Source: Chrysemys picta bellii (Eukaryota). Taken from it: a stretch of DNA of 64,000 bases. Shown here in pieces: positions 40,509 to 64,000 of the stretch; positions within the stretch are counted from its first letter, which is position 1; each line of letters starts with the position of its first letter. The position numbers and the translations under genes were made by a program. The notes below the pieces were generated by a model. That model saw only the letters and a list, made by a program, of their open reading frames with translations. It was not told where the DNA came from and searched no databases. Location: NCBI RefSeq assembly GCF_011386835.1, contig NC_088802.1, positions 3,038,001 through 3,102,000 on the forward strand. Direction: 5' to 3'.

Positions 40509-41253
40509 ATGTGCCCCCCTCTCCTGCCTCTGGCCCTCGCCCTCCTCACAGCGGTGCCCCCGGGCGCTCAACAAGGTAAGGAGCCGACCGGGCCGTGAGG
40601 CTGGGAACTCGCACTCGGTGGGTGGGGGCTCGGACGGGGCAGCGGGGGGCTCAGCAGGGGGTGCTCTCCCCTGGTCCCAGTGCGCTCAATAAGGAACCCA
40701 ACTCCCAGGGTCCCAGGAGAATCCCAGAGCCAGTGAGCCCATTCCTGTCGCCCTACAAATCTTCCCCCTGCGGCTCCAGCTGGATGCACCCTTCCCCTTC
40801 ACTTCCTGTCTCAAACTTGTGTTCATCTGTTACCCACCCCAGAGGTGGCTGCATCTCCGTGCCAGGCGAGGGGTCCCCGTCACTCTTGTCCCCTCGTAGG
40901 CAGGAACCACTCGGCTCTGGAGTTTGCAGGCCCAGAGGTGACGGCAGAAGCCGGCTCGACTGTGAGTCTGTCCTGCAGCCGGCCAAGACTGACCTGGCAG
41001 TGGATCCCACGGTACTCAGTCTGTGCTGGTGTCAGCGGTGGGATACAGACGATCTACACGGTGACAGTGGCTGGGGCCAGGTACAGCCTGTGGGAGAGAT
41101 TTAACAGGCGGCTGCGTCTCCTACTGGATCAGGGAACCTGAACCTTCATCCTCCAACTGAGAACCCTCCACATGAACGACTCAGGGGCTCTCTTCTGTCC
41201 CTGCCCCAGCCCCAGCCAGAACGCCACGCCGATCTCCGTGACCATCACGCCCG
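40509..41253 (+). pseudogene. C1: truncated G6b-like gene (leader and V exon only)
   Basis: Leader 40509-40575 (MCPPLLPLALALLTAVPPGAQQ). V exon 40930-41253 has an in-frame TGA at 41139-41141. It is followed directly by the duplication junction, so no C2 or TM exons. Confidence 0.88.
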
Positions 41254-46142: not shown

Positions 46143-46997
46143 CCCCCCACCCGCCCTGGCTCCGCTCCCCTCTCCTCTCCACCCCCTTCATGAGTTGCAT
46201 TCACACCCCTGGCTCCCAGGTGATGGGAAATTCAGCTGGAAGATGCTGGAAATCTCTGTTAAAATCCTGTGGTGGGGAGTTCCGCAGGTTAACAGATTGT
46301 GGCATTAAAATCTGCCTTTGAACCCCTCGTGTCTGTGGTGTGTCTCCTTTGTCCTCAAGACCCCACCCTTTGGGCCTGGCCCCGGGGGGTGGGGTTCAGG
46401 CAGACTCAGCTCCCCTTCAGTTCCTGCCCCAAACGTCTGTGCAGAGCTGCCCCGCCCCAGAGTGAACTGCACTGGCCAAGGGATCCCTGTATAACCAGCC
46501 CCCCTCGCCCCGCCCCAGAGGCGGCTACATCTCCACTCCAGCTGAGGGACATCTGACCATGAGGAGAGTTCAGGCCGAGCGCACCCACCTCCGTGGGCAG
46601 GATTTGAACCTGCGACCCCCAGCTTTGCACCCTGCCTGTTAACAATTATCCTGTAGCACCAGGACAAACCACTAGGTGGGGAAAACTGAGCAAGTGGGTA
46701 AAGCCAGGAGCTAATCGGGTGTTGGGAGCCAGGACACCCGGGTTCTAACCCCAGCTCGGAGACGGACGTGGGGCCCAGGGGCTCAAGCAGGGGGGATGGG
46801 AGCCAGGACTCCTGGGTTCTATTCGCAGCAGAGGGCGGCTACTGAACAAGAGGCCGTGTGATATCCTGTGCTTTGCTGGCAGCAGCTTCCTCTTCGCTGT
46901 AGCCCTGTGAACAACGCCCCTGCCCAGAGGCAGACGCACCCTGTGCCCGGAGACCCCTCTCCCTGCCCCAGGGATCCCACCCCTCCCCGGCTCCACC

Positions 46998-48847
46998 ATG
47001 CGCCCCCCTCTCCTGCCTCTGGCCCTCGCCCTCCTCACAGCGGTGCCCCCGGAGGCTCAACAAGGTAAGGAGCCGACCGTGCCGTGGGGCTGGGAACTCG
47101 CACTCGGTGGGTGGGGGCTCGGCCGGGGCAGCGGGGGGCTCAGCGGGGGGCACTCTCCCCTGGCCCCAGTGCGCTCAATAAGGAACCCAGGAAAATCCCA
47201 GAGCCGGTGAGCCCATTCCTGTCACCCTAAAAATCTCCCCTTGCGGCTTCAGCTGGATGCACCCTTCCCCTTCACTTCCTGTCCCAAACTTGTGTTCCGC
47301 TGTTACCCACCCCAGAGGTGGCTGCATCTCCGTGCCAGGCGAGGGGTCCCCGTCACTCTTGTCCCCTTGTAGGCAGGAACCACTTGGCTCTGGAGTTTGC
47401 AGGCCCAGAGGTGACGAAAGAAGCCGGCTCGACTGTGAGTCTGTCCTGCAACCTGACGGGGCCGAGGCTGAGCTGGCGGTGGGTCCCGCGCTACACAGTC
47501 TGCGCTGGTGTGAGCGGTGGGATAAAGACAATTTAAACAGTGACGGCGGCTGGGGCACACGACACTCCGGAGGGGAGGTTTAAGAAGCGGCTGCATCTCC
47601 TAACCAGTCGGAGAACCCAAACCTCCGTCCTCCAACTGCAACCCCTCCACATGAACGACTCGGGGGTCTTCTTCTGTGTCAGCCCCAGCCAGAACGCCCC
47701 GCCGATCTCCATGACCATCACGCCCAGTAACAGCACTGCCGGGGGGCTGGGAGCCAGAACACCTGGGTTCTCTCCCCAGCTCTGGGAGGGGAGTGGGGGC
47801 TAGTGGTTAGAGCAGGGATCTGGGAGCCAGGACACCTGGGTTCTCTCCTAGCTCTGGAAGGAGGGGAGCAGCAAGCAGCCAGCAGGGGGCGGGTCGTTAA
47901 CTGGATCCATCACGTTTGGCTCTGCCCCCACAGGCTGCCCGGCCAGGGTGTCCATCGCCACGGTCCCCAAGGAGCCGGTCGTGGAGGGAGCGTCTGTGTC
48001 CCTCTCCTGTACCCACTGTGGGGAGCAGGGACCCACATCACCCCCAGCAGGAGGCCCCACGTGGCAGCTCAATGGGGAAACGCTACCAAACTCCACAGCC
48101 CCTCGGATCCTGAGGTCCAACGTGACGATAGAGGGTTTCTCCAGCTCGTTGGAAGGTCTGTGGAGCTGCCACCTGCCTGGGGATCCCCTCCAGTCTGGGA
48201 GCTACTGCCTGGAGCGCGAGCCGGGGGCGCACGGGACCCAGCAGAGCACCAGCCCCACCCCCACCAGTCCAGGTGCATATTCAGCCCCCGTATCCCTGTC
48301 ACAGTCAATGCAGCCACCTCTGGGGCGGGGCAGCTGGGTACCAGCCGCACAGAACAGCGACACCCCAGGGTTGGGGTGGGGAGCGAAGGGGGAGCCTGGA
48401 TGCGATGGGGGGAGGTCGGCTGGGAACCCTGAGTTTGGCTTAGACCTGGGCGCTGGAGTCCACAGCATACCTGTGGGGGAAAACGTACCAAGGGGTTCCT
48501 GTGCTGGCAGCCCCGTGTCCCACCCCAGAGGTGGCTGCATCTCAGCGCCGGGCGAGTGGTCCCTGTATAATCAGCCCCGTGTCCCGCCCCAGAGGTGGCT
48601 GCATCTCAGCGCCCGGCGAGTGGTCCCTGTATAAACAGCCCCGTGTCCCACCCCAGAGGTGACTGCATCTCAGCTCCGGGTTTGTGGCCGCTCCAAGCTA
48701 CTGTCTCCGGTCGCAGGCTCCGGGATGACGGTGCTGGCTGTGCGCTGTGGCCTCGCCTTCCTCTTCTTCAGTGTCACCCTCGGGGCCGTCGGCTACGTGC
48801 ACTGGAAAACCCGGGCCCGGGCGGCCAGCAGGTACTCGCCCCTTTAA
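46998..48847 (+). pseudogene. C2: activating-type G6b-like gene with a nonsense codon in the V exon
   Basis: Exons 46998-47064, 47403-47726 (TAA at 47534-47536 where paralogues have TAC), 47934-48272 and 48717-onward (TM MTVLAVRCGLAFLFFSVTLGAVGYVHW). The expected final acceptor near 49030 is replaced by Gypsy sequence. Confidence 0.85.
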
Positions 48848-49314: not shown

Positions 49315-50399
49315 TGTGACGTTCTGAGTGTGGTATAATATCTCATTGGAAGGTGACAGGGCCAGAACGAGTTAATTACCTCCCAGTCTGACCTCACCCA
49401 GGGCCGAACTTTAGAGACTGGTTAGGAAGATCTGTAAACGAACAGAGCTTTGAAATGCAGCCGGCATTGTTAGAGATCTCAAGGGGAGATGTTTGCTCAG
49501 GTCTTGGGATGTCAGCAAACAAGTCTTGTCTATTGCTAGAGCTTTAATTCAAAGACCAAAAAAGAAATATTAACATTTATGAAGACACTGGAGTGAAATA
49601 GTATTATTGTCTCTATGTCTGTTTGAAGGTTGTGGTAACCTGGATCTGAACTGTTTAATGGGTAAATTACCCTGTGCTAATTGCCAGGATGTTTGGGAGA
49701 AGGAGAATTAAGCCTATTGTTTTCTCAGGCCAAGCGGCTGCTGGAAATGTATAAAAACCCTGGGACACGATCCTGCTTCATCTCAGATCTGCTTTGGGTT
49801 TCAAGAGGGGGAAACCTTAAGCCACAAGGATTGAGATCCCCAGACACTGACTGGAGCCACCCTGAATATGGACATTGGACTATAACCTCGGGACTATTTC
49901 TAAAAGGACTTTTGGCCACTACAAGCTCATCTCTGCTGTGGCTGAACCTCAAGAATTGAATTCAAGTCTGTCTGTATATTGATCTTTTAACCAACACTCT
50001 CTCGCTTTTCTTTTGTAATAAATTTTAGCTTAGTTAATAAGAATTGACTATAACGTGTATTTTGGGTAAGATCTAAGTTATAATTGAACCTGGGTGTGTG
50101 GCTGACCCTTTGGGGGTTGGAAGAACCTTTTCTTTTATATGATGAGAGAAGATTTTCAGTAATCATCATCATATCTGACGTGTGTGTCTGGACGGAGGTC
50201 TGAGGCCGGGCACTTTAAGGGAACTGCGTTGTTTGGACGTCTGAGTAACCAGGGAGGTTCTATAGAAGCTGTTCTGGTTTGGTTGGTAAATCTAAGTATT
50301 GGAAGATCCACCAGCGTTTGGGGTTTGTCTGCCCCGGTCTGTTTGCAGTTCACCCTGATTGAGTGACCTCAGCTGGCTCCCACGGGCAGCACCGTCACA
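49315..50399 (+). mobile_element. LTR, same family as 42317-43459 (3' LTR of a deleted element)
   Basis: TGTGACG...accgtcaCA termini, with long near-identical blocks shared with 42317-43459. Confidence 0.92.
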
Positions 50400-51710
50400 A
50401 CTACACATAATGTAGGACCTACATTATTGTTCCCCACTGGCAGGAGTAGAGAATGACGGGTTCCCGTGAGCAGGGGCCACGCTGAAAACAGCCCCTGCCC
50501 CTGTTGTTGCTGGGGGAAGGTGAACCTTAGTGCACCACCCATCTTTGTTTACCCCGTGGTTTGTTTACAAGACATAACGTAGGCCCTATACTAAGGTTCT
50601 GACAGGGCAGGATTTAAGAAAATCCCTCCCCTTTCTCCTCCCCTTTGGAGAAGTCTTAAAGTGTTTTGCACAACCTCTGCCTGTCTTTGTTTATACTTTG
50701 GTTTCTTTACGATACTTAATGTAGGACCTACCCTATTTGTCTCAGGAGGCAGTATGAGAGAGGGACCAGTTCCCATGTGCCTTGTCCCCACTGGAACCAA
50801 CCCTATCCCCCCTCCTGCTATTTGGTGACAAAATCCATCCAAAAAAGCTACTTGGTTTGATGCTTTGATTTGTTTATGATACAAAATGTAGGACCTACAA
50901 TATTGCTCTTGGCGGTAGTAATGGAAGAGCCCCCACCTACTGCCCTCTGGAGAAGCAGAAAATATCCATTCAGGGCCATTATGTTTACACTTTGGTTTCT
51001 ATACAATACACAGGGTAGGACCTACAATATTATTCTCAGCAGTCAGGAACGGGGGGCGGACTGGTTGCCATGAGCAGGCTCCCCATTCACCTGCCATTGT
51101 ATTCCACCACTTGGACCAGCAAAAAAAAGGATTCTGTTTGTTTACCGTTTATTTTGTTTACAATACATCATATAAGACCTACAATGTTAGCCTCAGTGGA
51201 GTATAATGGAAGGTAACCAGCACCGTTCTGGAAATCATAGAATCATAGAATATCAGGGTTGGAAGGGACCTCAGGAGGTCATCTAGTCCAACCCCCAATC
51301 CCCCCATCTTCTGTTATCAGGGGAAAGTATTCACAACTCAGACAAATTTTGCTTATGTTTTGATTTACATAATACATAATGTAGGACCTACAATATTGTT
51401 TGTGGATTGTGACTGATTCCCATCAGCAACAGTTTCCTCTGCAATATACCCTCCCGCCCCTCTCCTTCTGTTGCTTCAAGCCACAGAGTATTTCCTTCCT
51501 GCCCAACACCCACTTTATTGACACCTTGCTTTGTTTACGATACATAATGTAGGACCTATGACATATATCTAGGGGGCAGGAATGGAGGCGGTGGACCCGC
51601 CCCCTTTCAGTTGACATTTGAAGTAGCAGGAAACTTCATAGCTGGCCGTGCCCCACTTGGCCTGGGCTTGTTTACAGTACATAATATAGGACCTACAATA
51701 TTGTCAACAC
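50400..51710. repeat. Degenerate array of a palindromic core (tgtttac..acataaTGTAGGACCTACAatatt), about 9 copies
   Basis: Cores near 50413, 50579, 50720, 50887, 51015, 51173, 51379, 51547 and 51686; the array starts again at ~63817. Confidence 0.85.
51233..51296 (-). mobile_element. CR1 3'-end fragment
   Basis: aatcatagaatcatagaatatcagggttggaagggacctcaggaggtcatctagtccaaccccc is the reverse complement of a CR1 (ttctatga)n terminus. Confidence 0.8.
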
Positions 51711-51850
51711 AGTTCTCCGCCCCCCTCCATGACCAGAGAATTAACTGCAGAGACAGACGGGTGTCACAGGGATTCTCCGAGGGAAGGAGGCGTCTTTCCC
51801 CAACGTGGGGCCTGGCCCTGCCCCAGAGGCACCTGCGCTTGCCAGCCCCG

Positions 51851-54800
51851 TCAGCCGTGGCCGGTGGCCAGTTCAGAGTAGATGGTGGCCGGGCCAGTTT
51901 CTGCCCTGACCCCGGCCCCACGGGGTGCCTGGAAGTGCAGGGTGGAGTATTGGATCCCCTCCGGGCCCTGCAGAGATCGGGGCAGGACAGAGTGGGCGTT
52001 AGGGTGGCATTACCGCCTGGGGGCACTGCCAGGGGAGAGTCCCCTTCTGCCCCCTGCCCACTCCCCACAGCCCAGCGCCCCCTGCTGCCCCCGTCCTGCT
52101 CCCCACAGCCCAGCGCCCCCTGCTGCCCCCGTCCTGCTCCCCGCAGCCCGGCGCCCCCTGCTGCCCGCATCCCCACAGCCCAGCATCCCCTGCTGCCCCC
52201 GTCCCGCTCCTCACAGCCAGGGCTGGATTAACCTTTCGTGGGCCTGGCGCCAAACATATTTCCGGGCCCCCAGGCAGGCAGTGGAGCCTGGCACAGGGAG
52301 GTCAGTCCCCGGAGTGAGGGGCAATGGGGCATGGAAGGGGCAGCCCCGCTCTGCCCAATGCGAGGGCGCTGGTTACAAACCCGTGCCCAACCCTGTGCTG
52401 CCAGCGTGACCCTTCCCCTCGGGGGGGGCACCATGCCACACCACACAGCCCCCCCACCCCAACACCCCCCAACTTCCTATGGCCAGAGCCCCCCCAGTCC
52501 CCTCCACACAAATGCCCAGCGCCCTGCACAACACCCCCCTGCCCACAGCCCCACAACTGCCCAGCACCCCCCACAGAACCCCCACTCCCTAGCGCCCAAC
52601 ACACAGAGATCTTCCCCGCCCCCTCACAGCCCAGGACCCTCCCCCCCGCAGGAAACCCCTTCCCCTAAGCCCTGCTGGGAGGTGACTGTGTCTGCCGGGC
52701 TGAGCCGGGAGCGCAGCCAGGGCTGGTCCCGGGGCCGGGAATCGCTCCAGCCCCTCGGCAGTGCTGAGCTCAGCCAGGCCAGGGCCTGCCCCGGACGGAG
52801 TCCCTCAAGATGCCCAGCCAAGCTCCCCGCACTGTCCCCTTCCTCCCCCCGCCCCCGGCTGAGACCGGCCAGGCTGCTGCCCCACTCCCAGGCGGCTCAG
52901 CTCCAGGGGGACAGGGGGGGCCCACAGGTGGTGGGAAGCAGAGACGGCCCGGAGCCGGAGGTGCACTGGGGTCCGGCCAGGGGACCGAGAGGAGCAGGGG
53001 GTGGGGCCGAGGGGAGTAAATGGTGGGCGGGGGGAGCCAGACGGGTCTTGGGGAACAGGGCAAGCGGAGCAGCCCAGGGCCCCTTCTGAGCATGGGCCCG
53101 GCTCCATGGCGCCCTTGGAGCTGTTGTAAACCCAGCACTGCCCCCGGCCCTGCCCCCCGCTGCTGCCCCCCGCCCCCCACGGCCCAGCACCCCCTGCTAC
53201 TCCCCCGCTGCCTCCAGCCCCGCCCCCTGCAGCCCAGCCCCCCTTGCTGCCCACAGCCCAGTGCCCCCTGCTGCCCCGTCCCGCTCCCTACGGCCCAGTG
53301 CCCCCTGCTGCCCCGTCCCGCTCCCCACAGCCCAGTGCCCCCTGCTGCCCCCGTCCCGCTCCCTACGGCCCAGTGCCCCCTGCTGCCCCTGCCCCACCCC
53401 CCATGGCCCAGCACCCCCTGCTGCCCCCCGCCCCGGTCCCCTCAGCCCAACGCCCCCTGCTGCCCCGCCCCCCACAGCCCAGTGCCCCCTGCTGCCCCCC
53501 GCCCCGTCCCCACAGCCCAGCGCCCCCTGCTGCCCCCGGCCCTGCCCCCTGCAGCCCAGCCCCCCCTGCTGCTCCCGCCCCCAGCCCCACAGCCCAGTGC
53601 CCCCTGCTGCCCCCGCCCCGAGTGCCAGGGGCGTTACCTCGCCAGCAGGCAGGGGGTCAGCCAACGGGGGCTTCTGCTCGGCTCCGCCAGCCTCCATGGG
53701 GCCGGGCTGCTCAGCTGGGAAGGGGGAGAGACAGCGACGGGTTACAGATGCCAGCCGTGTGGCCCCCCAGCCCGGCCCCCCTGCCCCGGCCCCAGCCCCT
53801 GGCCCCAGAGCTCACCCCATTGCTCCCACTTTCCGTCCATCTTCGTCGCCGGGAGGGTCGCGCTGGGGATACACAGGGACAATTAGACCATTTCCCATGG
53901 CAGAGAAACCCCTGGGCTAGGCCCGGCCCCTATGGAATAACCCCCTATAGCGGCCGGCCGGCCTCACCCCATCCTGTACTCCCCTCATACAATACCCTGC
54001 CCTATAGACTCCAGGCTGGACCCACTGCCTCGGGCACATTTCAGGGCACAGCTCCTATAGACTAATCCTCCCTCTGCCCCTTAGCCCATCATCCCTATAG
54101 GACTGGCCCTATAGCACAACCAGTCTATACCACCTGTCTGTCTGTGCCTCCGCCTATACCCCTCCCCTATAGAATATCTCCCCACTGGCCCCATAGACTA
54201 TTGCCTTTATAGCTCCACCAACCCTATAGAAGACCTCCCTTATATCCCCACTGACCCTATAGGCTCTCACCTATATGTACCTTGTACCTGCCCCATAGAA
54301 TAAATCCCTTCTATAGCCCATATACCTATTCCCTATTGTGACGTTTATAGAAATATTTACCCCTGTAGCCTCATTAGCTCTTATGGGACCCCCCCAATTC
54401 CCTCCCCATCCTGTTCCCACCCCCCCAATTCCCTCCCCATCCTGTTCCCACCCCCCCATGGAATGTCCCCCTATAGCCGCCCCATTCCACCGCCGCCCCC
54501 TATGGACTGACTCTGCCTACATCCCTGCCCCCTAACACCGCCCCACACCCCACTGCTCCCCCCCGTACCTGGCATCCCTCAGCCGGCGCCTCCTGCAGCA
54601 AATTACAGCAACGGCGCCCACGAGGACCAGGGCCAGAGCAGCCCCCGCGCAGCCCCCGACCAGAGGCAGGAGGGCGCCTGGGGTGCCGGTGTCTGGGGGG
54701 AAAAATGGGGGCTAGGATCACTCACCCGGCGCTGAGATGCGACTGCCTCTGGGGTGGGGCGCGGGGGCTGTTCATAGAGGGATCCCTCATCCGGCGCTGT

Positions 54801-57394
54801 GATGCAGCACCTCTGGGGTGGGGCACGGGGGCTGTTCATAAAGGGATCCCTCGCCCGGCGCTGAGATGCGTCTGCCTCTGGGGTGGGGCGCGGGGGCTGG
54901 TTATACAGGGATCTCTCGTCCGGCCCTGAGAGGCGGCTGTCTCTGGGGTGGGGGGCGGGGGCTGGTTATACAGGGATCCCTCGTCCGGCGCTGAGAGGCG
55001 GCTGTCTCTGGGGTGGGGCGCGGGAGCTGGTTATACAGGGATCCCTCGTCTGGCGCTGAGATGCGGCACCTCTTGGTGGGAGCTGGGGAACAGCCGCAGA
55101 GAACACCTGCGTCCAGTGCCCTTCAGTGCCCCTTTTCCACCCCTCTCGGCCGGTCGCCTGCAGCCCCAGCTGAGCTGGACTCGGGCGGAGAAGCGAGGGG
55201 GGCGCAGGGCAGGGGGAGATCCACACACCTGGACTGGTGGGGATGGGGCCGGGTGGGGGGCTCTCCTGGGTCCCGTGCCCCCCCGGGTCACGCTCCAGGC
55301 AGTAGTCCCCAGACCGGGGGGGATCCCCAGGCAGGCGGCAGCTCCACAGACCTTCCAACGAGCTGGAGAAACCCTCTATCGTCACCTTGGACCTCAGGAT
55401 CCGAAGGGCTGTGGAGTCTGGTGGCGGCTTCCCATTAAGTAGCCACGTGGGGCCCCCTGCTGGGGGTGACGTGGGTCCCTGCGCCCCACAGGGGGTACAG
55501 GAGAGGGACACAGACGCTCCCTCCCCGACCGGCTCCTTGGGGACCGCGGCGATGGACGCCCCGGCCGGGCAGCCTGTGGGGGCAGAGCCAAACGTGATGG
55601 AGCCACTGAAAGGGCACCCCCTGCTGGCGGCTTCCCCCCCCCCCACCCGGCTGGGCTAGAACCCATCAAAATCCTAAACCACTCCCCACAGCTGGGGAGA
55701 GAACCCAGGCGTCCTGGCTCCCAGCCCCCCCCCTGCTCTAACCACTAGACCCCACTCCCCTGCTAGAGCCAGAAGAGAACCCAAGAGTCCTGGCTCCCAG
55801 CCCCAGTAGAGCTGTTACCGGGCGTGATGGTCACGGAGATCGGCGTGGCGTTCTGCCTGGGGCTGGCACAGAAGAAGACCCCCGAGTCGTTCATGTGGAG
55901 GGTTTGAAGTTCGAAAACGGAGGTTTGGGTTCCCTGATCCGTTAGGAGATGCAGCCACTTCATAAATCTCTCCAGCAGGCTGTTCCCTGCCCCACCCGCC
56001 ATCGCTGTGTAGATCGTCTGTATCCCACTGCTGACACCAGCGCAGACCGGGTAGCGCGGGATCCACCGCCAGCTCAGGCTCGGCCCCGTCAGGTTGCAGG
56101 GAAGTTTCACAGTCGAGCCGGCTTCTGCCGTCACCACTGGACCTGCAAACACCAGAGCGGATGGGTCCTGCCCGACTGGAGAGCCAGGGTCCCCTTACCC
56201 GGCGCTGAGATGCAGCCACCTCTGGGGTGGGGCCCGTATACAGGGATCCCCCGTGACCGTAGAGAACCCCTCCTTGCTAACGAGCAAAGGGGTCGCTGTT
56301 CGGCACCGGTAACCCCTGACAAAGCCCCCGCACGCAGCCCCTGGCCCTGGCAGTATTTCTCCACAGCGGGTTGGGTGAGGCCTCTCATAACGGCTCCCGG
56401 CTGCGGCCCTGCGTCTGAGCGCCGAACGGGGGCTGGGTCCCAGGCCGCGACGACGGACGAGCTTTGCCCGCCTGGCTCCAGACTCCTGGTCAGCCCCTGG
56501 AGGGCAAAGCCAGCTCAGTGCCGGGGGGCGGAGGGGCCAAACCAGAGTCAAGCCGGGATCTGGGGCCTGTTGCTTTGCAGTGTGGACGCAGTTCCGTGGA
56601 CTCGTGAGGCAGGGGAGACTTACAGTCGCCTTTCCCCGCCCCCACTCTCCCCGGGGACCGCACCGGGGACCCGGGCGGCTGGGCTGAGGCCCATGTACCA
56701 GAGCCAGGGTCAGGGTTACAGATGAGTGTGGACGCCCCAGCCCTTGGCTGGCTAGCTCCGGCCAGACCTGGAGTCTGAGGCCCCGCTTCACACCCGGGGT
56801 TGAGCCCACCCCGGTGTAACCGCTCCGAGACGGGTCACTCTTGGGGGTCAGAGGCAGATGTGGGCCTGGGGGGGGCCGCGATGGGCTGCGGAGCCGAACC
56901 AAAGGAACTCGGGGTTCGCTGGGCCCTTGGGGGCAGTGAGCCGGGGATGTTTGGGGAGCCAGTGACCCAGGTGGGAGGTCGCCTTGCGCTCTTCCCCCCC
57001 CAACCCCTCTGCAAGCCAGGCCAGGACTGGCCGTGCGCCGGGGAGGTGGCCGACCAGCCGGCGGTGTCAGGGAATTAGCACTGGCAAGTCTGGGGGACCC
57101 TGAGAAACCTCCCGCAGGGCTGAGATGCAGCCACCTCTGGGGTGGGGCAGCTGGTTATACAGGGATCCCTTTCCTGGGGCTGAGATGCAGCCACCTCTGG
57201 GGCAGGGCGGCTCGTTATACAGGGACCCCTAGGCACTGGGACAAGCCCTGAGCCTCCCGCCCCATTCGCTGCAGGCCTCCAGGCCGAGCCCAGCCCCGGC
57301 CCCACCACGGCCCCGTTTGCTCCTTACCTGCCTGAGCCCCTGGGGGCACTGCTGCCAGGAGGGCGAGGGCCAGGGGCAGGAGCTGGGGGTGCAT
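51851..57394 (-). CDS. C3: intact inhibitory receptor with C-type ectodomain, 366 aa (signal, IgV, IgC2, uncharged TM, ITIM IQYSTL, ITSM-like TIYSEL)
   Basis: Exons 57394-57328, 56142-55819, 55573-55229, 54692-54569, 53862-53816, 53714-53638 and 51967-51851; phases 1,1,1,2,1,0; 1101 nt open. TM ALLPLVGGCAGAALALVLVGAVAVICC-RRRR. Minus-strand AATAAA at 51514-51519. Confidence 0.85.
53150..53625. repeat. GC-rich minisatellite (cccctgctgcccccgtcccgctccccacagcccagcgc family)
   Basis: Tandem units in C3 intron 6; also at 52060-52210. Confidence 0.9.
54720..55075. repeat. ~62-bp minisatellite (ggcgctgagatgcagccacctctggggtggggc..ttatacagggatccctc)
   Basis: About 6 units. Same family at 23330-23450, 27500-27660, 39950-40030, 48490-48680, 57110-57230, 61070-61170 and 62000-62120. 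Confidence 0.9.
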
Positions 57395-57769
57395 GGTGGA
57401 GCTGAGGTGGGGGTGATCCGGTGAGAGGGGCCTCTGGGGATATCTGTCTCTGGGGAGGGGCCTTGCTCCCAGGCGCGGAGGGGAAGAGGAAGGAGGTTGT
57501 GAAGAAATCAGGAAACCCACAGAGCTCGGGCAGCAGGTAACCCTTTCGCTCCAGTGCTGGGCTGGGGGCAGCAGGGGGTGTCTCCCCTGCCCCACTGCCC
57601 CAGGGCTCTGTTATGGGGCCAGTGCTGTTTGTTTATCCCTCCCCCACACTGATCCATTCACTGTGGGGCTGTGTGTGAGGAATGCACCCGACACACATAC
57701 ACACAATTACACAGCTGGCAGGGACCCACACACAATCACACACACACACACACACAGCCAGCAGGGACA

Positions 57770-58608
57770 CACAAGAATGGCCATATTGGGTCAGGCCAAA
57801 GGTCCATCCAGCCCAGTATCCTGGCTTCCCACAGTGGCCAATGCCAGGGGCCCCAGAGAGAATGAACACAACAGATAATCATCAAGTGATCCATCCCCTG
57901 TTGCCCATTCCCAGCTTCTGGCAAACAGAGGCCAGGGCCACCATCCCTGCCCAGCCTGGCTACTAGCCATTGATGGACCTGTCCACCATGACCTTATCTA
58001 GCTCTTTTTTTAACCCTATTACAGTCTTGGCCTTCACAACATCCTCTGGCAAGGAGTTCCCCAGGTTGACTGTTCACTGTGTGAAGAAATACTTCCTATG
58101 TTTTGTGTTAAACCTGCTGCCTAGTCATTTCATTGGGTGACCCCTTGTTCTTGTGTTACGAGAAGGAGTAAATAACACTTCCTTATTCACTTTCTCCACA
58201 CCAGTCATGATTTTATAGACCTCGATCATATCCCACCTTAGTTGCCTCTTTTCCAAGCTGAAAAGTTTCCATTTTATTAATCTCTTCTCATACGGCAGCC
58301 GTTCCATACCCCCTCAGCACTTTTGTTGCCCTTTTCTGAACCTTTTCCAATTCCAATCGATCTTTTTGAGACGGGGCGACCACATCTGCACGCAGTGTTC
58401 AAGGTGTGGGCGTCCCATGGGTTTATATAGCGGCAACATGATATTTTCTGTCCTAGTCTCTCTCCCCTTCTTGATGATTCCCAACATGCTGTTCTGCTTC
58501 TTTGACCCCGCTGCGCTTTGAGTGGATGAGTTCAGAGAACTCTCCACAGTGACTCCAGGATCTTTCTTGCGTGGGAACAGCTCATTTAGTCATTGTATAT
58601 GTCTAGTT
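57770..58608 (-). mobile_element. CR1 LINE 3' fragment
   Basis: Reverse-strand ORF pieces MLGIIKKG..ENIMLPLYK..PHLEHCVQMWSP and LPYEKRL..LFSLEKRQLRWDMIEVYKIMTG; closely related to 18182-19279. Confidence 0.92.
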
Positions 58609-58675
58609 ACACACACATGCGGACACTCAATTACACACACACACACAGCTGGCAGATACACACACAATTAGATAC

Positions 58676-58710
<35 letters not shown>

Positions 58711-59042
58711 TCCAGCAGAGAGACACATGCTGAGCAACCAGGGACACACACCATTGCGCACACACACACTTACACAGCAGTCGCACACACACATAGAGCA
58801 GACAGGGACACACAATTACACACACATACAATTACACAGCAGACACAGAGCAGACAGGGACACACAATTACACACACGTACAATTACACAGCAGACACAC
58901 ACAGAGCAGGCAGGGACTGAGACACACACACAGAGCCAGCAGGGGAGGATTTTGATGGGGGGCTATAGCCCAGCGCAGGGGGGAACAGCCAGCAGGGGCC
59001 GGGCCATTAACTGGATCCATCACATTTGGCTCTGCCCCACAG

Positions 59043-60510
59043 GCTGCCCGGCCGGGGCGTCCATCGCCGCGGGTCCCAAGGAGCCAGTCGAGGAGGGAGT
59101 GTCTGTGTCCCTCTCCTGCACCCCCTGTGGGCCGCAGGGAACCACCTCATCCCCAGCAGGGGGCGCCACGTGGCAGCTCAATGGGGAAATGCTACCAAAC
59201 TCCACAGCCCCTCGGATCCTGAGGTCCAACACGGTGACGATAGAGGGTTTTTCCAGCCGTCTGGAGGGTCTGTGGAGCTGCCGCCTGCCTGGGGATCCCC
59301 CCTGGTCTGGGGGCTACTGCCTGGAGCACGATCTGGTGTGACAGTGCTGCCCGTGGGAGCCAGCTGAGGTCACTCAATCAGGGTGAACTGCAAACAGACC
59401 GGGGCAGAGAAATCCCAAATGCTGGTGGATCTTCCAATACTTAGATTTCCCAAACAGCCCAAAACAGCTTCTACAGTACCTCCCTGGTTACTCAGACGTC
59501 CAAACAACGCAGTTCCCTTAAAGTGCCCAGCCTCAGGCTCCGTCCAGACACACGTCAGATACGATGATGGTTACTGAAAATCTGATCTCATCAGATACAA
59601 GAAAAGGTTCTTCCAACCCCCAAAGGATCAGCCACACACCCAGGTCCAATGATAACTTAGATCTTACCCAAAATACACGTTATAGCCAATTCTTATTAAC
59701 TAAGCTAAAATTAATTAGAAAAGAAAAGAGAGAGAGTGTTGGTTAAAAGATCAATATACAGACAGACTTGAATTCAATTCTTGAGGTTCAGACACAGCAG
59801 AGATGAGCTTGTAGTAGCCAAAAGTCCTTTTAGAAATAGTCCAGAGGTTATAGTCCAATGTCCATGTTCAGGGCGGCTCCAGTCAGTGACTGGGGATCTC
59901 AATCCTTGTGGCTCAGGGTTTCCCCTCTTGAAACCCAAAGCAGATCTGAGATGAAGCAGGATCATGTCCCAGGGTTTTTATACATTTCCATCAGCCGCTC
60001 AGCCTGAGAAAACACTAGGCTCAACTTTCCTTCTTCCCAACATCCTGGCAATTAGCACAGGGTAATTTATCCATTAAGCAGTTCAGATCCAGGTTACCAC
60101 AACCTTCAAAGAGACATAGAGACAATAATACTACTTCACTCAAGTATTATCATAAATGTCAATCTTCCTTTTTGATCTTTGAATTAAAGATGCCACAGGG
60201 GAGGTCGGCTGGGAACCCTGAGTTTGGATTAGACCTGGGCGCTAGAGTCCACAACATACCTGTGGGGGAAAACGTACCAAGGAGTCCCTGTGCTGGTAGC
60301 CCCGTGTCCCGCCCCAGAGGTGGCTGCATCTCAGCTCCGGGTTCGTGGCCGCCCAAGCTTCTGTCTCCAGTCACAGGCTCCGCGCCCGGCAGCGGCTGGG
60401 GGGTGACGGTGCTGGCTGCGCGCTGTTCCTCAGCGCCACCCTCAGAGCCGTCGGCTACCTGCACTGGAAAACCCGGGCCCGGCAGGCCAGCAGGTACCCG
60501 CCCCTTTAAC
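59043..60510 (+). pseudogene. C4: activating-type G6b-like remnant (C2 exon and TM exon only)
   Basis: C2 exon from 59043 is cut at 59337 by an antisense LTR. The TM exon from 60377 has an out-of-frame deletion right after ...GCG CGC TGT. No leader or V exon upstream. Confidence 0.85.
59337..60190 (-). mobile_element. Truncated LTR, same family as 42317 and 49315, antisense
   Basis: tgtgacagtgctgcccgtgggagcc is the reverse complement of the LTR 3' end. Homology stops near 60190, where C-gene intron 3 sequence resumes. Confidence 0.9.
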
Positions 60511-60869
60511 ACCAGTGCCCCCTGCGGGGCTCCCCCTGCCCTGCTCCCTGGGGCAATGGGGCCAGCCCCGACTGCCAGGGGAGAGTCCCCTGCTGCCTCC
60601 CCCCGCTCCCTGCAACCCAGTGCCCCCTGCGGGGCTCCCCCTGCCCTGTTTCCTGAGGCACACAGCCAGCACTGACTGCCTGGGCACAGCCCCCCCTACC
60701 CCCCCCCAGTGCCGGAGCGAAAGGGTTACCTGCTGCCCGAGCTCTGTGGGTTTCCTGATTTCTTCACAACCTCCTTCCCCTTCCCCTCAGGGGCTGGGAG
60801 CAAGGCCCCTCCCCAGAGACAGATGCCCCCAGAGGCCCTTCTCACCGGATCACCTCCACCAGCTCCACC

Positions 60870-63688
60870 ATGCGCCCCCAGCTCCTGCCCCTGGCCCTCG
60901 CCCTCCTGGCAGCAGTGCCCCCGAGGGCTCAGGCAGGTAAGGAGCAAACCCAGCCGTGGGCCTGGCCTCTCGCCAAGTGAGGCTGGGGATGGGCTCGGCC
61001 GGGAGGCCTGCAGCAAACAGGGCGGGAGGCTCAGGGCTTGTCCCAGTGCCTGGGGGTCCCTGTCTAACCAGCCGCCCCGCCCCAGAGGTGGCTGCATCTC
61101 TGCACCGGGGGAGGGCTCCCTGTATAACCAGCTGCCTCACCCCAGAGGTGGCTGCATCTCAGCCCCAGGGGAGGTTTCTCAGGGTCCCCCAGACTTGCCA
61201 GTGCTAATTCCCCTGACACCGCCGGCTGGTTGGCCACCTCCCCAGGGCACGGCCAGGCCTGGCCTGGCTTGGAGAGGGGCTGGGGGCTCGGGGGAGGGAG
61301 TGGAGGGCAGCCTGACCCACCGGGCGTAACATGTCTCGGAGCGGCTGAGCCGGGATGGGTTCACACTCGGGCGTGAAGCGGGGCCCACACTCTGGGCAGG
61401 ACCGCGCTGCAGCGGAAGCCGGGGGCTACATTCGCCCGGGGCTGGGGTGTCCACACTGGTTTGTAACCCCCACCCAGACTCCGGTGTCTCAACGATGTCT
61501 GGCCACCCGTGTCCCAGACACCCCGGCCGCACCTGCCAGGGGGGTGGGAAGGCGACTGGCGCCCCTCCCTCCCCCGCCCACGCGTGTCACTAGCCCGGTG
61601 GGGCTGCGTCCACACTGCAAAGCAACGTGCCCCGGATCCTGGCTTGACTCTGGCCACTCTGTCCCCAGGACTCTGGTGTCGGGCGATTCGGGTGTAGCCG
61701 GAGCCTCGGTGGCACAGTCAGGGCTGCTGCACGCTGGGCCCAGCACAAGACAGCCCGAGCGATGGGAGCCGGCTCCTGGGGGCCGTGTGCCGTGATGCCC
61801 GTGGGCGGCTTGTCCTGCCTGCAGCCTGGCGCGCTCCTCAGGGACAGACGCAGGGCCAAAGCCGGGAACTGTTGTTAGCTGCCTCGTCCAGCCCACTGCG
61901 GATAAATACTGCCAAGGCCAGGGGCTGCGTGCGGGGGCTTTGTCAGGGGTTATGGGTATCGAACGGCGACCCCTTTGCTCGTTAGCAAGGAGGGGCTTAG
62001 GGTCACAGGGGGATCCCTGTATGAATGTGCCCCATCCCAGAGCTAGCTGCATCTCAACACAGAGCAAGGGGATCCCTATATAATCAGCCACCCCTCCCCA
62101 GAAGTGGCTGCATCTCAGTGCCGGGTAAGGGGTCCCCGTCTCTCCAGTGCTCTGTTGGGCAGGACCCATCAGGCTCTGGTGTTTGCAGGCCCAGAGGTGA
62201 CGGCAGAAGCCGGGTCGACTGTGAAACTTCCCTGCAACCTGACGGGGCCGAGGCTGAGCTGGCAGTGGATCCCGCGCTACCCGGTCTGCGCTGGTGTCAG
62301 CGGTGGGATACAGACGATCTACACAGTGATGGCAGCTGGGGCACACAGCACTCCGGAGGGGAGATTTCAGAAGCGGCTGCGTCACCTAATGGCTCAGGGA
62401 AACCGAACCTCCGTCCTCGAAGTCCAAACCCTCCACATGAGCGACTCGGGGACCTTCTTCTGTGCCAGCCCCAGTCAGAACGCCTCGCCGATCTCCGTGA
62501 CCATCATGCCCGGTAACAACCCTGCCCGGGGGCTGGGAGCCAGGACTCCTGGTTCTCTCCCCGGCTCTGGAAGAGGTTCATTTTGATGGGGGGCTATAGC
62601 CCAGCGCGAGGGGAAGCGGAAAGCAGCCAGCAGGGGGCGGGTTGTTAACTGGATCCATCACTTTTGGCTCTGCCCCCACAGGCTGCCTGGCCGGGGCGTC
62701 CATCAAAGGGGTCCCCAAGGAGCTGGTCATGGAGGGAGCGTCTGTGACCCTTTTCTGTACCCCCTGTGGGGCGCAGGGACCCACGTCACCCCCAGCAGAG
62801 GGCACCACGTGGCAGCTCAATGGGAAGCTGATATCGAACTCTCCAGCCCTTCGGATCCTGAGGGCCAACAAAATGACGATAGAGAATTTCTCCAGCCGGT
62901 TCGAGGGTCTGTGGAGCTGCCGCCTGCCTGGGCATCCCCCCCGGTCTGGGGACTACTGCCTGGAGCGCGACCAGAGTGGGCACAGGACCCAGCAGAGCAC
63001 CAGCCCCACCAGTCCAAGTTTGTATTCAGCCCCCGTGTCCCTGTCAGTCAATGCGGCCACCTCTGGGGTGGGGAAGCTGGATACCAGCCTCACAGAATGG
63101 CGACACCCCAGGGTTGGGGTGGGGAGCGAAGGGGGAACCTGGATGCGATGGGGGGAGGTCGGCTGGGAACCCTGAGTTTGGATTAGACCTGGGCGCTGGC
63201 GTCCATAACATACCTGTGGGGGAAAACGTACCACGGGGTCCCTGTGCTGGCAGCCCCGTGTCCCGCCCCAGAGGTGGCTGCATCTCAGCTCCGGGTTTGT
63301 GGCTGTTACAAACTTCTTTCTCACGTCGCAGGCTCCCCGCCCGACAGCGGCTGGGGGGTGACGGTGCTGGCCGTGCGCTGTGGCCTCGCCTTCCTCTTCC
63401 TCAGCGCCAGCCTCGGGACCATCTACTATGTGCACTGGAAAACCCGGGCCCGGCCGCCCAGCAGGTACCCGCCCCTTTAACGCCAGCGCCCCCTGGGGGC
63501 TCCCCCTGCCCTGCTCCCTGGGGCAATGGGGCAGCCCCGACTGCCAGGGGACAGCGCCCCCTGCTGCCCCCGCCTGCACAGCACCCCCTAGCGCCACCTT
63601 GTGGGTCAGCTACCACATTTCTCTGCTGTGTGGCTCACACAATGTCTCTCTCCCTCCTTTCCTGTCTTGCAGGCGCCAGCGGGACTGA
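60870..63688 (+). CDS. C5: intact activating-type G6b-like receptor, ~291 aa (signal, IgV, IgC2, Arg-containing TM, short tail)
   Basis: Exons 60870-60936, 62189-62512, 62682-63017, 63332-63464 and 63673-63688 (tail ...RPPSRRQRD-stop), or read-through to TAA at 63478-63480 (...RPPSRYPPL). TM VTVLAVRCGLAFLFLSASLGTIYYVHW. The exon 3 donor is weak (CAA|gtttgt). Confidence 0.82.
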
Positions 63689-64000
63689 GGCCTTCGCTTC
63701 CCCGGCACCGCGTCCACACTGCACTCACCCCCCATCCCCTTCCACTCGCCTGAGAAGCCAGAAACTCCCTTCTGGGCCCCCATCCAGTCTGGTCACCGGC
63801 CATGTATTTACTGCACATAATGTAGGACCTACGTTATTATTCCCCCCGACTGGAGTATAGAATGACCGGTTCCCGCGCTCAGGGTCCCCGCTGGGAACGG
63901 CCCCAGCCCCTGCTGTTGCCTGGGGACGGTGAACGTTGTATGTGCAACCCGCATACACTTTGTGTACAGCTTGGCTTGTTTACAATACATATGGTAGGCC

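What the first reader, a model, noticed from the sequence alone, without database searches (positions are those of the whole stretch)
51851..63688. C3 (inhibitory) and C5 (activating) are head-to-head inverted duplicates sharing promoter, leader and ectodomain but not signalling exons
Seen: ~55800-57560 (-) mirrors ~60700-62520 (+), including the promoter block ggttacc..ctgcccgagctctgtgggtttcctgatttcttcacaacctcc, the 67-nt leader, intron 1 and the 324-nt V exon (about 81 of 108 aa identical by hand). The C2 exons are also homologous, but the TM and tail exons are unrelated. Established: inverted neighbours with shared ectodomains and opposite signalling (e.g. SIGLEC11/SIGLEC16) are kept alike by gene conversion. 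Inference: a co-expressed pair binding the same or overlapping ligands with opposite outputs.
Basis: partly seen in the sequence, partly recalled or inferred. Interest (0 to 1): 0.85.

Follow-up and report, generated by a model that had tools for sequence, protein, structure and literature searches.

The report
Turtle G6b-like inhibitory/activating receptor neighbours
Two neighbouring painted-turtle genes facing away from each other encode look-alike cell-surface receptors, one with an "off" tail and one with an "on" anchor; they belong to an undescribed turtle-wide family related to the platelet receptor G6b, but this pair has been drifting apart rather than being kept alike.

Summary
Arms 55223-57581 (-) and 60686-63023 (+) are homologous (82-96% identity), from a 51-nt promoter block identical in both, through the 67-nt leader, intron 1 and the 324-nt V exon to the C2 exon. 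Homology stops at the C2 exon donor.

- **C3** is NCBI's 366-aa "uncharacterized protein" of Chrysemys picta bellii. It has a G6b-type V domain, a C2 domain, an uncharged TM and an ITIM plus ITSM tail.
- **C5** is not annotated. It has an intact 291-codon, five-exon reading frame with an arginine in the TM and a 16-residue tail. Public RNA-derived contigs show its V-to-C2 and C2-to-TM splices.

Across turtles, ectodomains group by species and not by signalling type (AU test p = 6e-75), so inhibitory and activating genes do exchange their 5' parts.

In Chrysemys the C3/C5 pair shows no recent homogenisation:
- 75.6% amino-acid identity, dS 0.09, dN 0.157;
- the putative binding loop is only 50% identical;
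- C5 is as close or closer to a second inhibitory gene, C6, just beyond the window.

The head-to-head layout is the junction of two tail-to-tail units, not a pair-specific inverted duplication. This is a new member of a known kind of system.

The parts
57492..57542 (-). C3 copy of the 51-nt conserved promoter block, 98-148 nt upstream of the ATG
   Evidence: It is identical to the C5 copy. Its 31-nt core is also exact upstream of the Gopherus inhibitory gene.
57328..57394 (-). C3 exon 1: ATG plus 67-nt signal-peptide leader
   Evidence: The spliced model reproduces NCBI protein P0001 exactly.
55819..56142 (-). C3 exon 2: V-set Ig domain of G6b type, 324 nt
   Evidence: Pfam PF15096 G6B scores 36.2 bits against a cut-off of 24.3. 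Model.
55229..55573 (-). C3 exon 3: second (C2-type) Ig domain plus stalk, 345 nt
   Evidence: The AF2 model shows a second beta-sandwich at residues 136-223 with pLDDT about 90.
54569..54692 (-). C3 exon 4: uncharged transmembrane segment, followed by RRRR
   Evidence: AF2 predicts a helix at residues 254-285.
53816..53862 (-). C3 exon 5, cytoplasmic
53638..53714 (-). C3 exon 6, cytoplasmic
51851..51967 (-). C3 exon 7: ITIM IQYSTL (residue 333), ITSM TIYSEL (residue 356) and the stop codon
60724..60774 (+). C5 copy of the 51-nt promoter block
   Evidence: An RNA-type contig starts at 60807, downstream of the block.
60870..60936 (+). C5 exon 1: 67-nt leader
62189..62512 (+). C5 exon 2: G6b-type V domain, 324 nt
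   Evidence: Pfam G6B scores 42.5 bits. The best solved structure is 6r0x, G6b-B, at E = 1.6e-10. Contigs cover the exon only, at 62190-62510.
62682..63017 (+). C5 exon 3: C2 domain plus stalk, 336 nt, with a weak donor AA|GTTTGT
   Evidence: The joint 62511->62681 (GT..AG) and a contig joining 63017 to 63339-63465 are.
63332..63464 (+). C5 exon 4: TM with Arg258 (VTVLAVRCGLAF...)
   Evidence: The exon is present in a spliced contig.
63673..63688 (+). C5 exon 5: last five codons (RRQRD) and the stop
   Evidence: The same ...RPQRD end occurs in activating proteins of Mauremys, Chelonia, Natator and Lepidochelys.
59043..59334 (+). C4 pseudogene fragment: a C2 exon cut off by an interspersed repeat (59337-60189)
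60376..60494 (+). C4 pseudogene fragment: an activating-type TM exon with a 16-nt deletion that shifts the frame

Best explanation
C3 and C5 are two members of a turtle-wide multigene family of G6b-related type I receptors. Each has a signal peptide, a G6b-type V domain and a C2 domain. The family comes in two signalling forms.

C3 is the inhibitory form. It has an uncharged TM and a tail with an ITIM and an ITSM 23 residues apart. By analogy with mammalian G6b-B, I infer that this tail recruits SHP-1/SHP-2 after tyrosine phosphorylation.

C5 is the activating form. It has an arginine in the outer third of its TM and a 16-residue tail without motifs. I infer that it signals through an ITAM adaptor such as FcR-gamma or DAP12.

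Both genes carry the same conserved core promoter, and both are found in the same RNA-type runs.

The 5' module, from promoter to C2 exon, is exchanged between inhibitory and activating genes over evolutionary time. This is concerted evolution restricted to the ligand-binding part. The TM and tail modules stay type-specific.

In the Chrysemys lineage the last exchange is old (dS about 0.09). Since then the ectodomains of C3, C5 and C6 have diverged with dN above dS.

The head-to-head position of C3 and C5 is the seam between two tail-to-tail activating/inhibitory units.
For: - **C3 model.** The C3 gene model equals NCBI protein P0001 exactly, and its motifs are present.
- **C5 model.** C5 has an intact 291-codon frame over five exons with AG/GT borders.
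- **C5 transcription.** Spliced contigs show V->C2 and C2->TM. Coverage is exon-only and intron depth is zero.
- **Shared samples.** Runs X1, X2 and X8 hold words of both genes.
- **G6b relationship.** The Pfam G6B domain scores above its cut-off and the best PDB match is G6b-B.
- **Both forms are old.** Both tail types occur in Emydidae, Geoemydidae, Cheloniidae and Trionychidae.
- **Concerted evolution.** The ectodomain tree follows species, not type. Monophyly of the activating type is rejected at p = 5.8e-75.
- **Dating.** dS within Chrysemys is 0.087-0.100, against 0.125-0.18 to Mauremys and Gopherus.
- **Promoter.** The promoter block is identical in C3 and C5, and its core is exact in Gopherus.
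- **Locus order.** The order C6 | C5 | C4psi | C3 is shown by L002. Tail-to-tail units are seen in Gopherus and Mauremys.
Against: - **Annotation.** C5 is not called as a gene in the current annotation.
- **Weak splice site.** Its C2 donor is weak.
- **Relaxed constraint is possible.** C5's ectodomain sits on the longest terminal branch among the Chrysemys rows and has omega above 1, which also fits relaxed constraint.
- **Neighbouring copies decay.** Three activating-type copies in the window (C1, C2g, C4) and the Gopherus copy are pseudogenes.
- **Read evidence is limited.** The runs are coded, guessed to be RNA and kept as contigs, so expression level, tissue and cell type are unknown. The two spliced contigs come from 'organism A' and differ from the window by 2-5%.
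- **Not tested.** C3's tail exons were not checked with reads here. No adaptor binding or ligand was tested.
Confidence: 0.75

Rival explanations
1. C3 and C5 are a dedicated pair made by an inverted duplication. Ongoing gene conversion keeps their ectodomains alike, so they bind the same or overlapping ligands with opposite outputs.
For: - The genes are head-to-head with 2.3-kb homologous arms.
- The 51-nt promoter block is identical.
- There is a small cluster of sites shared only by C3 and C5 at 62127-62342, and a run of 11 concordant variable sites at 61175-61227, with p = 0.013 before correction for six pairs.
- Strong within-species homogenisation is seen in sea turtles and softshells.
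- SIGLEC11/16 gives a precedent: head-to-head genes about 9 kb apart (PMC5701461).
Against: - Ectodomain identity is only 75.6% in protein. That is as low as between turtle families, and compares with 93-94% within Chelonia, Natator and Pelodiscus.
- dN 0.157 exceeds dS 0.092.
- V residues 44-75 are 50% identical between C3 and C5, against 69% between C5 and C6.
- Informative sites support (C5,C6) 30 times, (C3,C6) 21 times and (C3,C5) 16 times.
- The rest of intron 1 is 86% identical between C5 and C6, against 71% between C3 and C5. The C2 exon is 92% identical between C3 and C6, against 87% between C3 and C5.
- The promoter is just as conserved against Mauremys (88-90%), so it reflects constraint and not conversion.
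Confidence: 0.12
2. C5 is a transcribed gene on its way to becoming a pseudogene, or it mainly yields a soluble product. In that case the locus has only inhibitory function in Chrysemys.
For: - C5 is not annotated.
- Its donor is weak, with A at -1 and T at +3, where C3 and C2g have G at both.
- It has a long branch and omega of about 1.6 on its own lineage.
- Sister activating copies C1, C2g, C4 and the Gopherus copy are dead.
- Contig depth in organism B is low.
- A Mauremys reevesii isoform that skips the TM exon is annotated (P0008).
Against: - There is no stop or frameshift in 876 nt.
- The only indels against C3 in 660 exon nt are 3 and 12 nt, both in frame. By contrast, there are 5 indels in about 525 nt of promoter and intron.
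- All Ig cysteines and tryptophans and the TM arginine are kept.
- The weak donor is used exactly as predicted, and the TM exon is present in the contig.
- C3 and C6 have similar terminal omega values (1.1 and 1.7), so omega above 1 is not peculiar to C5.
Confidence: 0.13

Closest known systems
SIGLEC11 / SIGLEC16 (primates)
   Same: These are head-to-head neighbours. A block of a few kilobases holding the 5' region and the V and C2 exons is shared, while the TM and tail exons differ. One gene has ITIMs and the other has a charged TM that needs an adaptor. Gene conversion is documented (PMC5701461).
   Different: The Ig family is different: sialic-acid lectins there, a G6b-type V domain here. 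In humans the shared block is described as extremely similar because of recent conversion. Here it is 87-88% identical in exons with dN above dS. Here the neighbours are also part of a repeated array, and C5 is as close to C6 as it is to C3.
Mammalian G6b-B (MPIG6B), the megakaryocyte and platelet inhibitory receptor
   Same: The V domain belongs to the same Pfam family (PF15096), and the best solved structure is 6r0x. C3 has an ITIM followed by an ITSM. The genomic neighbourhood holds G6b-type genes, and in Gopherus it holds ABHD16A.
   Different: The turtle proteins have a second Ig domain. They form a multigene family with separate activating genes. The window also holds other G6b-type genes (37486-39634 and 43999-46143). 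Their relatives carry LLYAEV/TVYATI tails, which from my memory of human G6b-B (LLYADL/TIYAVV) are closer to the mammalian protein. C3 and C5 are therefore paralogues of MPIG6B, not its orthologues.
'Merohomogenization' of paired opposing receptors (KLRC, KLRI, KLRB, Ly49, PIR)
   Same: Concerted evolution after speciation is restricted to the ligand-binding part, while the opposite signalling parts are conserved (PMC3210942). This is the pattern seen across turtles.
   Different: The fold and gene family are different. In Chrysemys the process looks lapsed or old.
FcR-gamma-coupled Ig receptors such as GPVI, OSCAR and LILRA (from my own knowledge)
   Same: They have an arginine in the outer part of the TM and a short tail.
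   Different: No sequence homology of the TM exon to these receptors was shown here. Adaptor pairing was not tested.
Fish G6f-like, an ITAM-bearing collagen receptor of thrombocytes
   Same: It is an Ig receptor named after the MHC-encoded G6f gene and it acts on thrombocytes (PMC3528668; only its title and the start of its abstract were read).
   Different: It carries its own ITAM and belongs to a different Ig lineage.

Membership tests
Paired activating/inhibitory immunoreceptors | The inhibitory partner has an ITIM in a long cytoplasmic tail | tested here: met
   C3 has IQYSTL at residue 333 and TIYSEL at residue 356.
Paired activating/inhibitory immunoreceptors | The activating partner has a basic residue in the TM and a short tail without motifs | tested here: met
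   C5 has Arg258 in VTVLAVRCGLAF and a 16-residue tail. The arginine is conserved in all activating forms.
Paired activating/inhibitory immunoreceptors | Neighbouring genes encode closely related ectodomains | tested here: met
   The ATGs are 3.5 kb apart. Identity is 88% in DNA and 75.6% in protein, which is low for a pair.
Paired activating/inhibitory immunoreceptors | Ectodomains are homogenised between the two types (family level) | tested here: met
   The tree follows species. The signalling-type label needs 6 changes on it. The AU test gives p = 5.8e-75.
Paired activating/inhibitory immunoreceptors | Recent homogenisation between C3 and C5 in particular | tested here: not met
   There is no long tract, C5 is as close or closer to C6, and omega is above 1.
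Paired activating/inhibitory immunoreceptors | Co-expression in the same cells | tested here: inconclusive
   The same runs hold words of both genes, and C5 is spliced. Cell type is unknown.
Paired activating/inhibitory immunoreceptors | A shared ligand, and pairing of the activating form with an adaptor | not testable with these tools
   This needs binding and co-precipitation experiments.
G6b (MPIG6B) family | A G6b-type V-set domain | tested here: met
   PF15096 scores 36.2 bits (C3) and 42.5 bits (C5) against a cut-off of 24.3. PDB 6r0x matches at E = 1.6e-10.
G6b (MPIG6B) family | A tandem ITIM plus ITSM in the tail | tested here: met
   C3 only.
G6b (MPIG6B) family | An ectodomain with a single Ig domain, as in mammals | tested here: not met
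   There are two Ig domains.
G6b (MPIG6B) family | Orthology with MPIG6B, by position and closest sequence | tested here: inconclusive
   Other G6b-type genes lie at 37.5-39.6 kb and 44.0-46.1 kb of the window. ABHD16A is next to the block in Gopherus. C3 and C5 look like paralogues of MPIG6B.

The most novel reading that the evidence does not exclude
Turtles carry a previously undescribed paired-receptor system derived from the platelet inhibitory receptor G6b. It consists of two-domain inhibitory genes (ITIM plus ITSM) and separate activating genes with an arginine in the TM. Their ligand-binding halves are homogenised within species: 93-94% identity in sea turtles and softshells. In the painted turtle they are instead diverging under positive selection. 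This would be the first activating counterpart of G6b, and a natural series running from tightly homogenised pairs to escaped pairs.
Probability: 0.5. Interest if true: 0.6.

Novelty: new member of a known kind. Interest (0 to 1): 0.5.

Why it matters
G6b-B is studied in mammals as a lone inhibitory receptor of platelets and megakaryocytes. A reptile family in which G6b-type receptors come as inhibitory and activating genes extends the paired-receptor principle to another Ig lineage, in what appears to be the MHC class III neighbourhood.

The family also offers a clean comparison. In some turtle species the binding halves are kept almost identical, while in the painted turtle they have come apart. 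That makes it possible to ask what drives homogenisation as against divergence of such pairs.

There is a practical result too. C5 is an expressed gene with an intact frame that is missing from the current annotation. Some activating forms are also named "inhibitory receptor G6b" in databases.

Tried and rejected
- **Exact-protein look-ups.** Look-ups for P0016, P0002 and P0008 found no locus, so the sea-turtle and M. reevesii loci could not be compared at the DNA level.
- **Fold search.** The AF2 model of C3 searched against the PDB gave only generic two-Ig-domain matches such as LAG3 D1-D2, CAR, CD4 and antibody fragments. That confirms the architecture but gives no specific relative.
- **Representative search.** It collapses the turtle paralogues, so it was useful only for distant relatives.
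- **Conversion-tract test.** A GENECONV-like longest-run permutation test gave only a marginal signal for C3-C5 (p = 0.013 uncorrected), and other pairs scored similarly.
- **Paper searches.** Four searches (G6b + turtle; MPIG6B + reptile; G6b + MHC class III; G6b-B + thrombocytes + chicken) found nothing on this family.
- **Failed script.** A fuzzy-match script on the loci timed out. It was replaced by the DNA search.
- **Rejected: one shared bidirectional promoter.** The two promoter copies lie 3.2 kb apart, with a pseudogene fragment and two interspersed repeats between them.
- **Rejected: a single inverted-duplication event.** The 5' module is shared by all family members, including C6 and the Mauremys gene.


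Full report

Yes. A repeat search on 50000-64000 finds a series of collinear inverted arms:

| Arm in C3 | Arm in C5 | Identity |
|---|---|---|
| 55801-56158 | 62173-62530 | 88% |
| 57070-57305 | 60977-61212 | 91% |
| 57406-57567 | 60699-60860 | 92% |
| 57305-57404 | 60860-60959 | 94% |
| 55387-55610 | 62645-62868 | 87% |

BLASTN joins these into 55223-57581 (-) against 60686-63023 (+), with E-values from 0 to 1e-142.

The alignment of the 5' ends shows an ATG, a 67-nt leader and a GTAAGG donor in both copies. No third copy exists in the window within 8 mismatches.

Identity between C3 and C5 by segment:

| Segment | Identity |
|---|---|
| Promoter and 5'UTR | 90% |
| Leader | 95.5% |
| First ~350 nt of intron 1 | ~91% |
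| V exon (324 nt in both) | 88.3% |
| C2 exon | 87% |
| 300 nt after the C2 exon | ~50% (unrelated) |
| Upstream of about -190 | ~50% (unrelated) |

At protein level the V domains share 80 of 107 residues.

**2. What are the two genes?**

The window is Chrysemys picta bellii.

*C3.* A homology search with the C3 C2 exon returns a 366-aa NCBI protein, P0001, named "uncharacterized protein Rv2082-like", at 100% identity. A seven-exon model on the minus strand reproduces that protein exactly:

| Exon | Coordinates |
|---|---|
| 1 | 57394-57328 |
| 2 | 56142-55819 |
| 3 | 55573-55229 |
| 4 | 54692-54569 |
| 5 | 53862-53816 |
| 6 | 53714-53638 |
| 7 | 51967-51851 |

The protein has a signal peptide and a V domain whose best Pfam family is G6B (PF15096, 36.2 bits against a cut-off of 24.3). 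It then has a second Ig domain, an uncharged TM followed by RRRR, and a tail with IQYSTL at residue 333 and TIYSEL at residue 356. These are an ITIM and an ITSM 23 residues apart. An AlphaFold model built on 29 relatives shows two confident beta-sandwiches, a TM helix at 254-285 and a disordered tail.

*C5.* C5 gives a five-exon model with AG/GT borders and an intact 291-codon frame:

| Exon | Coordinates |
|---|---|
| 1 | 60870-60936 |
| 2 | 62189-62512 |
| 3 | 62682-63017 |
| 4 | 63332-63464 |
| 5 | 63673-63688 |

Its V domain also matches G6B (42.5 bits), and its best solved relative is G6b-B, 6r0x (E = 1.6e-10). Its TM reads VTVLAVRCGLAFLFLSASLG..., with Arg258 in the outer third. The cytoplasmic tail is 16 residues and ends in RRQRD.

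No database protein is identical to C5. No gene is called at its place in the current assembly's annotation (L002). C5 is therefore unannotated. Its C2-exon donor is weak (AA|GTTTGT), where C3 and the paralogue C2g have AG|GTG.

**3. Is C5 expressed?**

I laid contigs of four public runs on 57689-63688. These runs are guessed to be RNA.
- Run X1 has a contig with a joint 62511->62681 (GT..AG). That is exactly intron 2.
- Run X2 has a 381-nt contig joining 62922-63017 to 63339-63465. That is the C2 exon spliced at the weak donor to the TM exon.
- Run X3 comes from the organism whose DNA runs hold 71-76% of the C5 words. Three of its contigs cover 62190-62510, with 0-1 differences each. That is the V exon and nothing beyond it.
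- Depth over most of intron 1 (61489-62088) is zero in all four runs.

So C5 is transcribed and spliced as modelled, apparently at a low level.

The same runs hold sampled words of both genes:

| Run | Share of C5 words | Share of C3 words |
|---|---|---|
| X1 | 0.29 | 0.16 |
| X2 | 0.22 | 0.28 |
| X8 | 0.09 | 0.34 |

That is co-occurrence in samples, not proof of co-expression in cells. C3's tail exons therefore rest on the NCBI model and on the same architecture in nine or more turtle species.

**4. The wider locus**

The window holds more family members.
- C1 (V exon 40930-41253) and C2g (leader 46998, V exon 47403-47726, C2 exon 47934-48272, activating TM near 48700-48830) each have an in-frame stop in the V exon.
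- C4 lies between C3 and C5. It is a C2 exon cut off at 59334 by an interspersed repeat, plus a TM exon with a 16-nt deletion.
- Two G6b-type genes of another subtype lie at 37486-39634 and 43999-46143.

A locus fetched for protein P0003 is the same assembly. It shows what lies beyond the window's end: a second inhibitory gene, here called C6 (375 aa), at about 65.2-71.2 kb in window coordinates on the minus strand. A TRAF-like MATH gene follows it.

The order is therefore C2g(+) C3(-) | C4psi(+) C5(+) C6(-). This is two tail-to-tail activating/inhibitory units.

The 3' flank of C5 (63810-64000) repeats the 3' flank of C3 (50400-50585), which agrees with that reading.

Other turtles show similar units:
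- Gopherus evgoodei has one such unit. The inhibitory gene is intact and the activating copy is frameshifted. The unit lies next to a G6B-like gene and ABHD16A.
- Mauremys mutica has an orphan activating TM exon, then an activating gene, then an inhibitory gene in convergent orientation.

The head-to-head position of C3 and C5 is thus the seam between repeated units. It is not the product of a private inverted duplication.

**5. Gene conversion: yes for the family, not visibly for this pair**

*Family level.* Both tail types occur in emydids, geoemydids, sea turtles and softshells, so the two signalling modules are old.

A maximum-likelihood tree of the V plus C2 region of 20 turtle proteins nevertheless groups sequences by species or lineage:
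- Natator inhibitory with Natator activating (96/94);
- Chelonia inhibitory with Chelonia activating (96/93);
- Caretta inhibitory with Lepidochelys activating (95/88);
- Pelodiscus inhibitory with the Pelodiscus activating form (98/90);
- one geoemydid clade holding both types.

The signalling-type label needs six changes on this tree, no fewer than shuffled labels need. Forcing the activating forms together costs 360 log-likelihood units (AU p = 5.8e-75).

Within-species identity between the inhibitory and activating ectodomains:

| Species or pair | Identity |
|---|---|
| Chelonia | 93.8% |
| Pelodiscus | 93.3% |
| Natator | 92.9% |
| M. mutica | 88.0% |
| M. reevesii | 78.9% |
| Chrysemys C3-C5 | 75.6% |
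| Chrysemys C6-C5 | 75.7% |

The Chelonia and Natator values are higher than same-type identity between Chelonia and Natator (89-90.5%).

This is the pattern Fossum and co-workers named merohomogenization (PMC3210942).

*This pair.* In Chrysemys the signal is weak and not specific to C3-C5.
- **Synonymous divergence.** dS among C3, C5 and C6 is 0.087-0.100, against 0.125-0.18 to Mauremys or Gopherus. The three ectodomains coalesce somewhat after the split from those lineages, but long ago.
- **C5 versus C6.** Over the whole 5' module C5 is as close or closer to C6 than to C3. The promoter is 0.904 against 0.883. The rest of intron 1 is 0.861 against 0.706. The V exon is 0.889 against 0.883. 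The C2 exon is 0.881 against 0.868.
- **C3's C2 exon.** It is closest to C6 (0.920) and to the pseudogene C2g (about 0.90).
- **Informative sites.** With the Mauremys gene as outgroup, sites support (C5,C6) 30 times, (C3,C6) 21 times and (C3,C5) 16 times. This is a mosaic, with one small (C3,C5) cluster at 62127-62342.
- **Promoter.** It is about as conserved between Chrysemys and Mauremys (88-90%) as between the Chrysemys copies. Its 31-nt core is exact upstream of the Gopherus inhibitory gene. The shared promoter therefore reflects constraint, and probably common regulation, not recent conversion.

**6. Selection on the ectodomains**
- **Overall rates.** For C3 against C5 over V plus C2, dS is 0.092 and dN is 0.157, giving omega of about 1.7. 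A Fisher test on near-identical counts gave p = 0.077.
- **Terminal branches.** Singleton substitutions give a nonsynonymous-to-synonymous ratio of 16:5 for C3, 19:4 for C5 and 15:3 for C6, against a neutral expectation of about 2.9:1.
- **Where C3 changed.** Nine of C3's 16 private replacements fall in codons 49-60, the C'-C'' part of the V domain. Across residues 44-75, C3 and C5 are only 50% identical, while C5 and C6 are 69% identical.
- **Reading frame.** It is clearly protected. There are no stops, and the only indels between C3 and C5 in 660 exon nt are 3 and 12 nt. Some 525 nt of promoter and intron carry five indels.
- **Structural core.** All Ig cysteines and tryptophans are kept.

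The most economical reading is diversifying change at the binding face of functional genes. That argues against C3 and C5 seeing the same ligand. Relaxed constraint on C5 cannot be excluded.

**7. Mechanism, with its basis**
- **Shown here:** the gene structures, the motifs, the TM arginine, the splicing of C5, and the family-level concerted evolution.
- **Inferred for C3** from established knowledge of ITIM/ITSM receptors and of G6b-B: after ligand engagement C3 is tyrosine-phosphorylated and recruits SHP-1/SHP-2 to damp ITAM signalling.
- **Inferred for C5:** it pairs through Arg258 with an acidic residue of an ITAM adaptor and activates. From my own knowledge, an arginine placed high in the TM favours FcR-gamma.
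- **Inferred from the conserved promoter and the shared runs:** the two genes are expressed in the same tissues.
- **Not testable here:** adaptor, ligand and cell type.

**8. Novelty**

Four searches of the paper library found nothing on G6b-type paired receptors in turtles or other reptiles. The kind of system is textbook, and the family appears undescribed.

Databases call the members "uncharacterized". One activating form of Pelodiscus is called "inhibitory receptor G6b".

Distant relatives found by the exhaustive search include squamate inhibitory forms with IQYSTL-type tails. They also include a coelacanth protein with a lysine in its TM and a 15-residue tail. The two-form design may therefore be older than turtles.

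**Verdict.** This is a new member of a known kind, of moderate interest.

Noticed in passing
window 40930-41253 and 47403-47726: The V exons of the two other C-type copies (C1 and C2g) each carry an in-frame stop codon. C1 has no C2 exon nearby. Both look like pseudogenes, and their promoter and intron 1 differ from those of C3, C5 and C6.
   Followed up: partly
window 59043-59334 and 60376-60494; L001 9133-9240: A gene fragment (C4) lies between C3 and C5. It is a C2 exon cut off by an interspersed repeat, plus an activating TM exon with a 16-nt deletion. Mauremys mutica also has an orphan activating TM exon just upstream of its activating gene, so this arrangement may predate the split of emydids and geoemydids.
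   Followed up: partly
L003 18790-20035 (Gopherus evgoodei): The activating copy lying tail-to-tail with the Gopherus inhibitory gene is frameshifted in both its V and C2 exons. It still shares the species-specific start of the C2 domain with its inhibitory neighbour.
   Followed up: partly
window 63673-63860: Skipping the 133-nt TM exon of C5 would shift the frame into an open stretch of about 60 codons starting ASGTEAFASP. Mauremys reevesii has an annotated isoform (P0008) with the homologous tail. This suggests a soluble isoform, as I recall for human G6b splice forms.
   Followed up: no
window 55960-56000 (C3 V exon, codons 49-60): C3's motif SLLERFMKWL differs from the TPEGRF-type motif of C5, C6 and most turtles. 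It resembles the softshell sequences (SLLERFKNWL) and the pseudogene C1 (SLWERF). It may be an old alternative loop moved by conversion from another paralogue.
   Followed up: no
window 37486-39634 and 43999-46143: Two further G6b-type genes of a different subtype lie in a duplicated block. Their relatives have tails with LLYAEV/TVYATI, closer to mammalian G6b-B as I remember it. They may be the true MPIG6B orthologues, duplicated.
   Followed up: no
window 52041-52218 and 53138-53620: GC-rich tandem repeats (73% GC) that read as proline-rich open frames on both strands lie inside the last long intron of C3. They may explain the odd database name 'Rv2082-like'.
   Followed up: no
window 57070-57240, 61050-61190, 54715-55080, 48510-48680: A repeat unit of about 65 nt (core GGCTGCATCTCAG ... 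CCCTGTATAACCAGC) is scattered through the introns of all family members. It attracts high contig depth in RNA-type runs, so it is a genome-wide repeat.
   Followed up: no
proteins P0025 and P0039: A Pelodiscus protein named 'megakaryocyte and platelet inhibitory receptor G6b isoform X1' has an activating-type TM (ALALRCSLVG) and no ITIM. A coelacanth relative has a lysine in its TM and a 15-residue tail.
   Followed up: no
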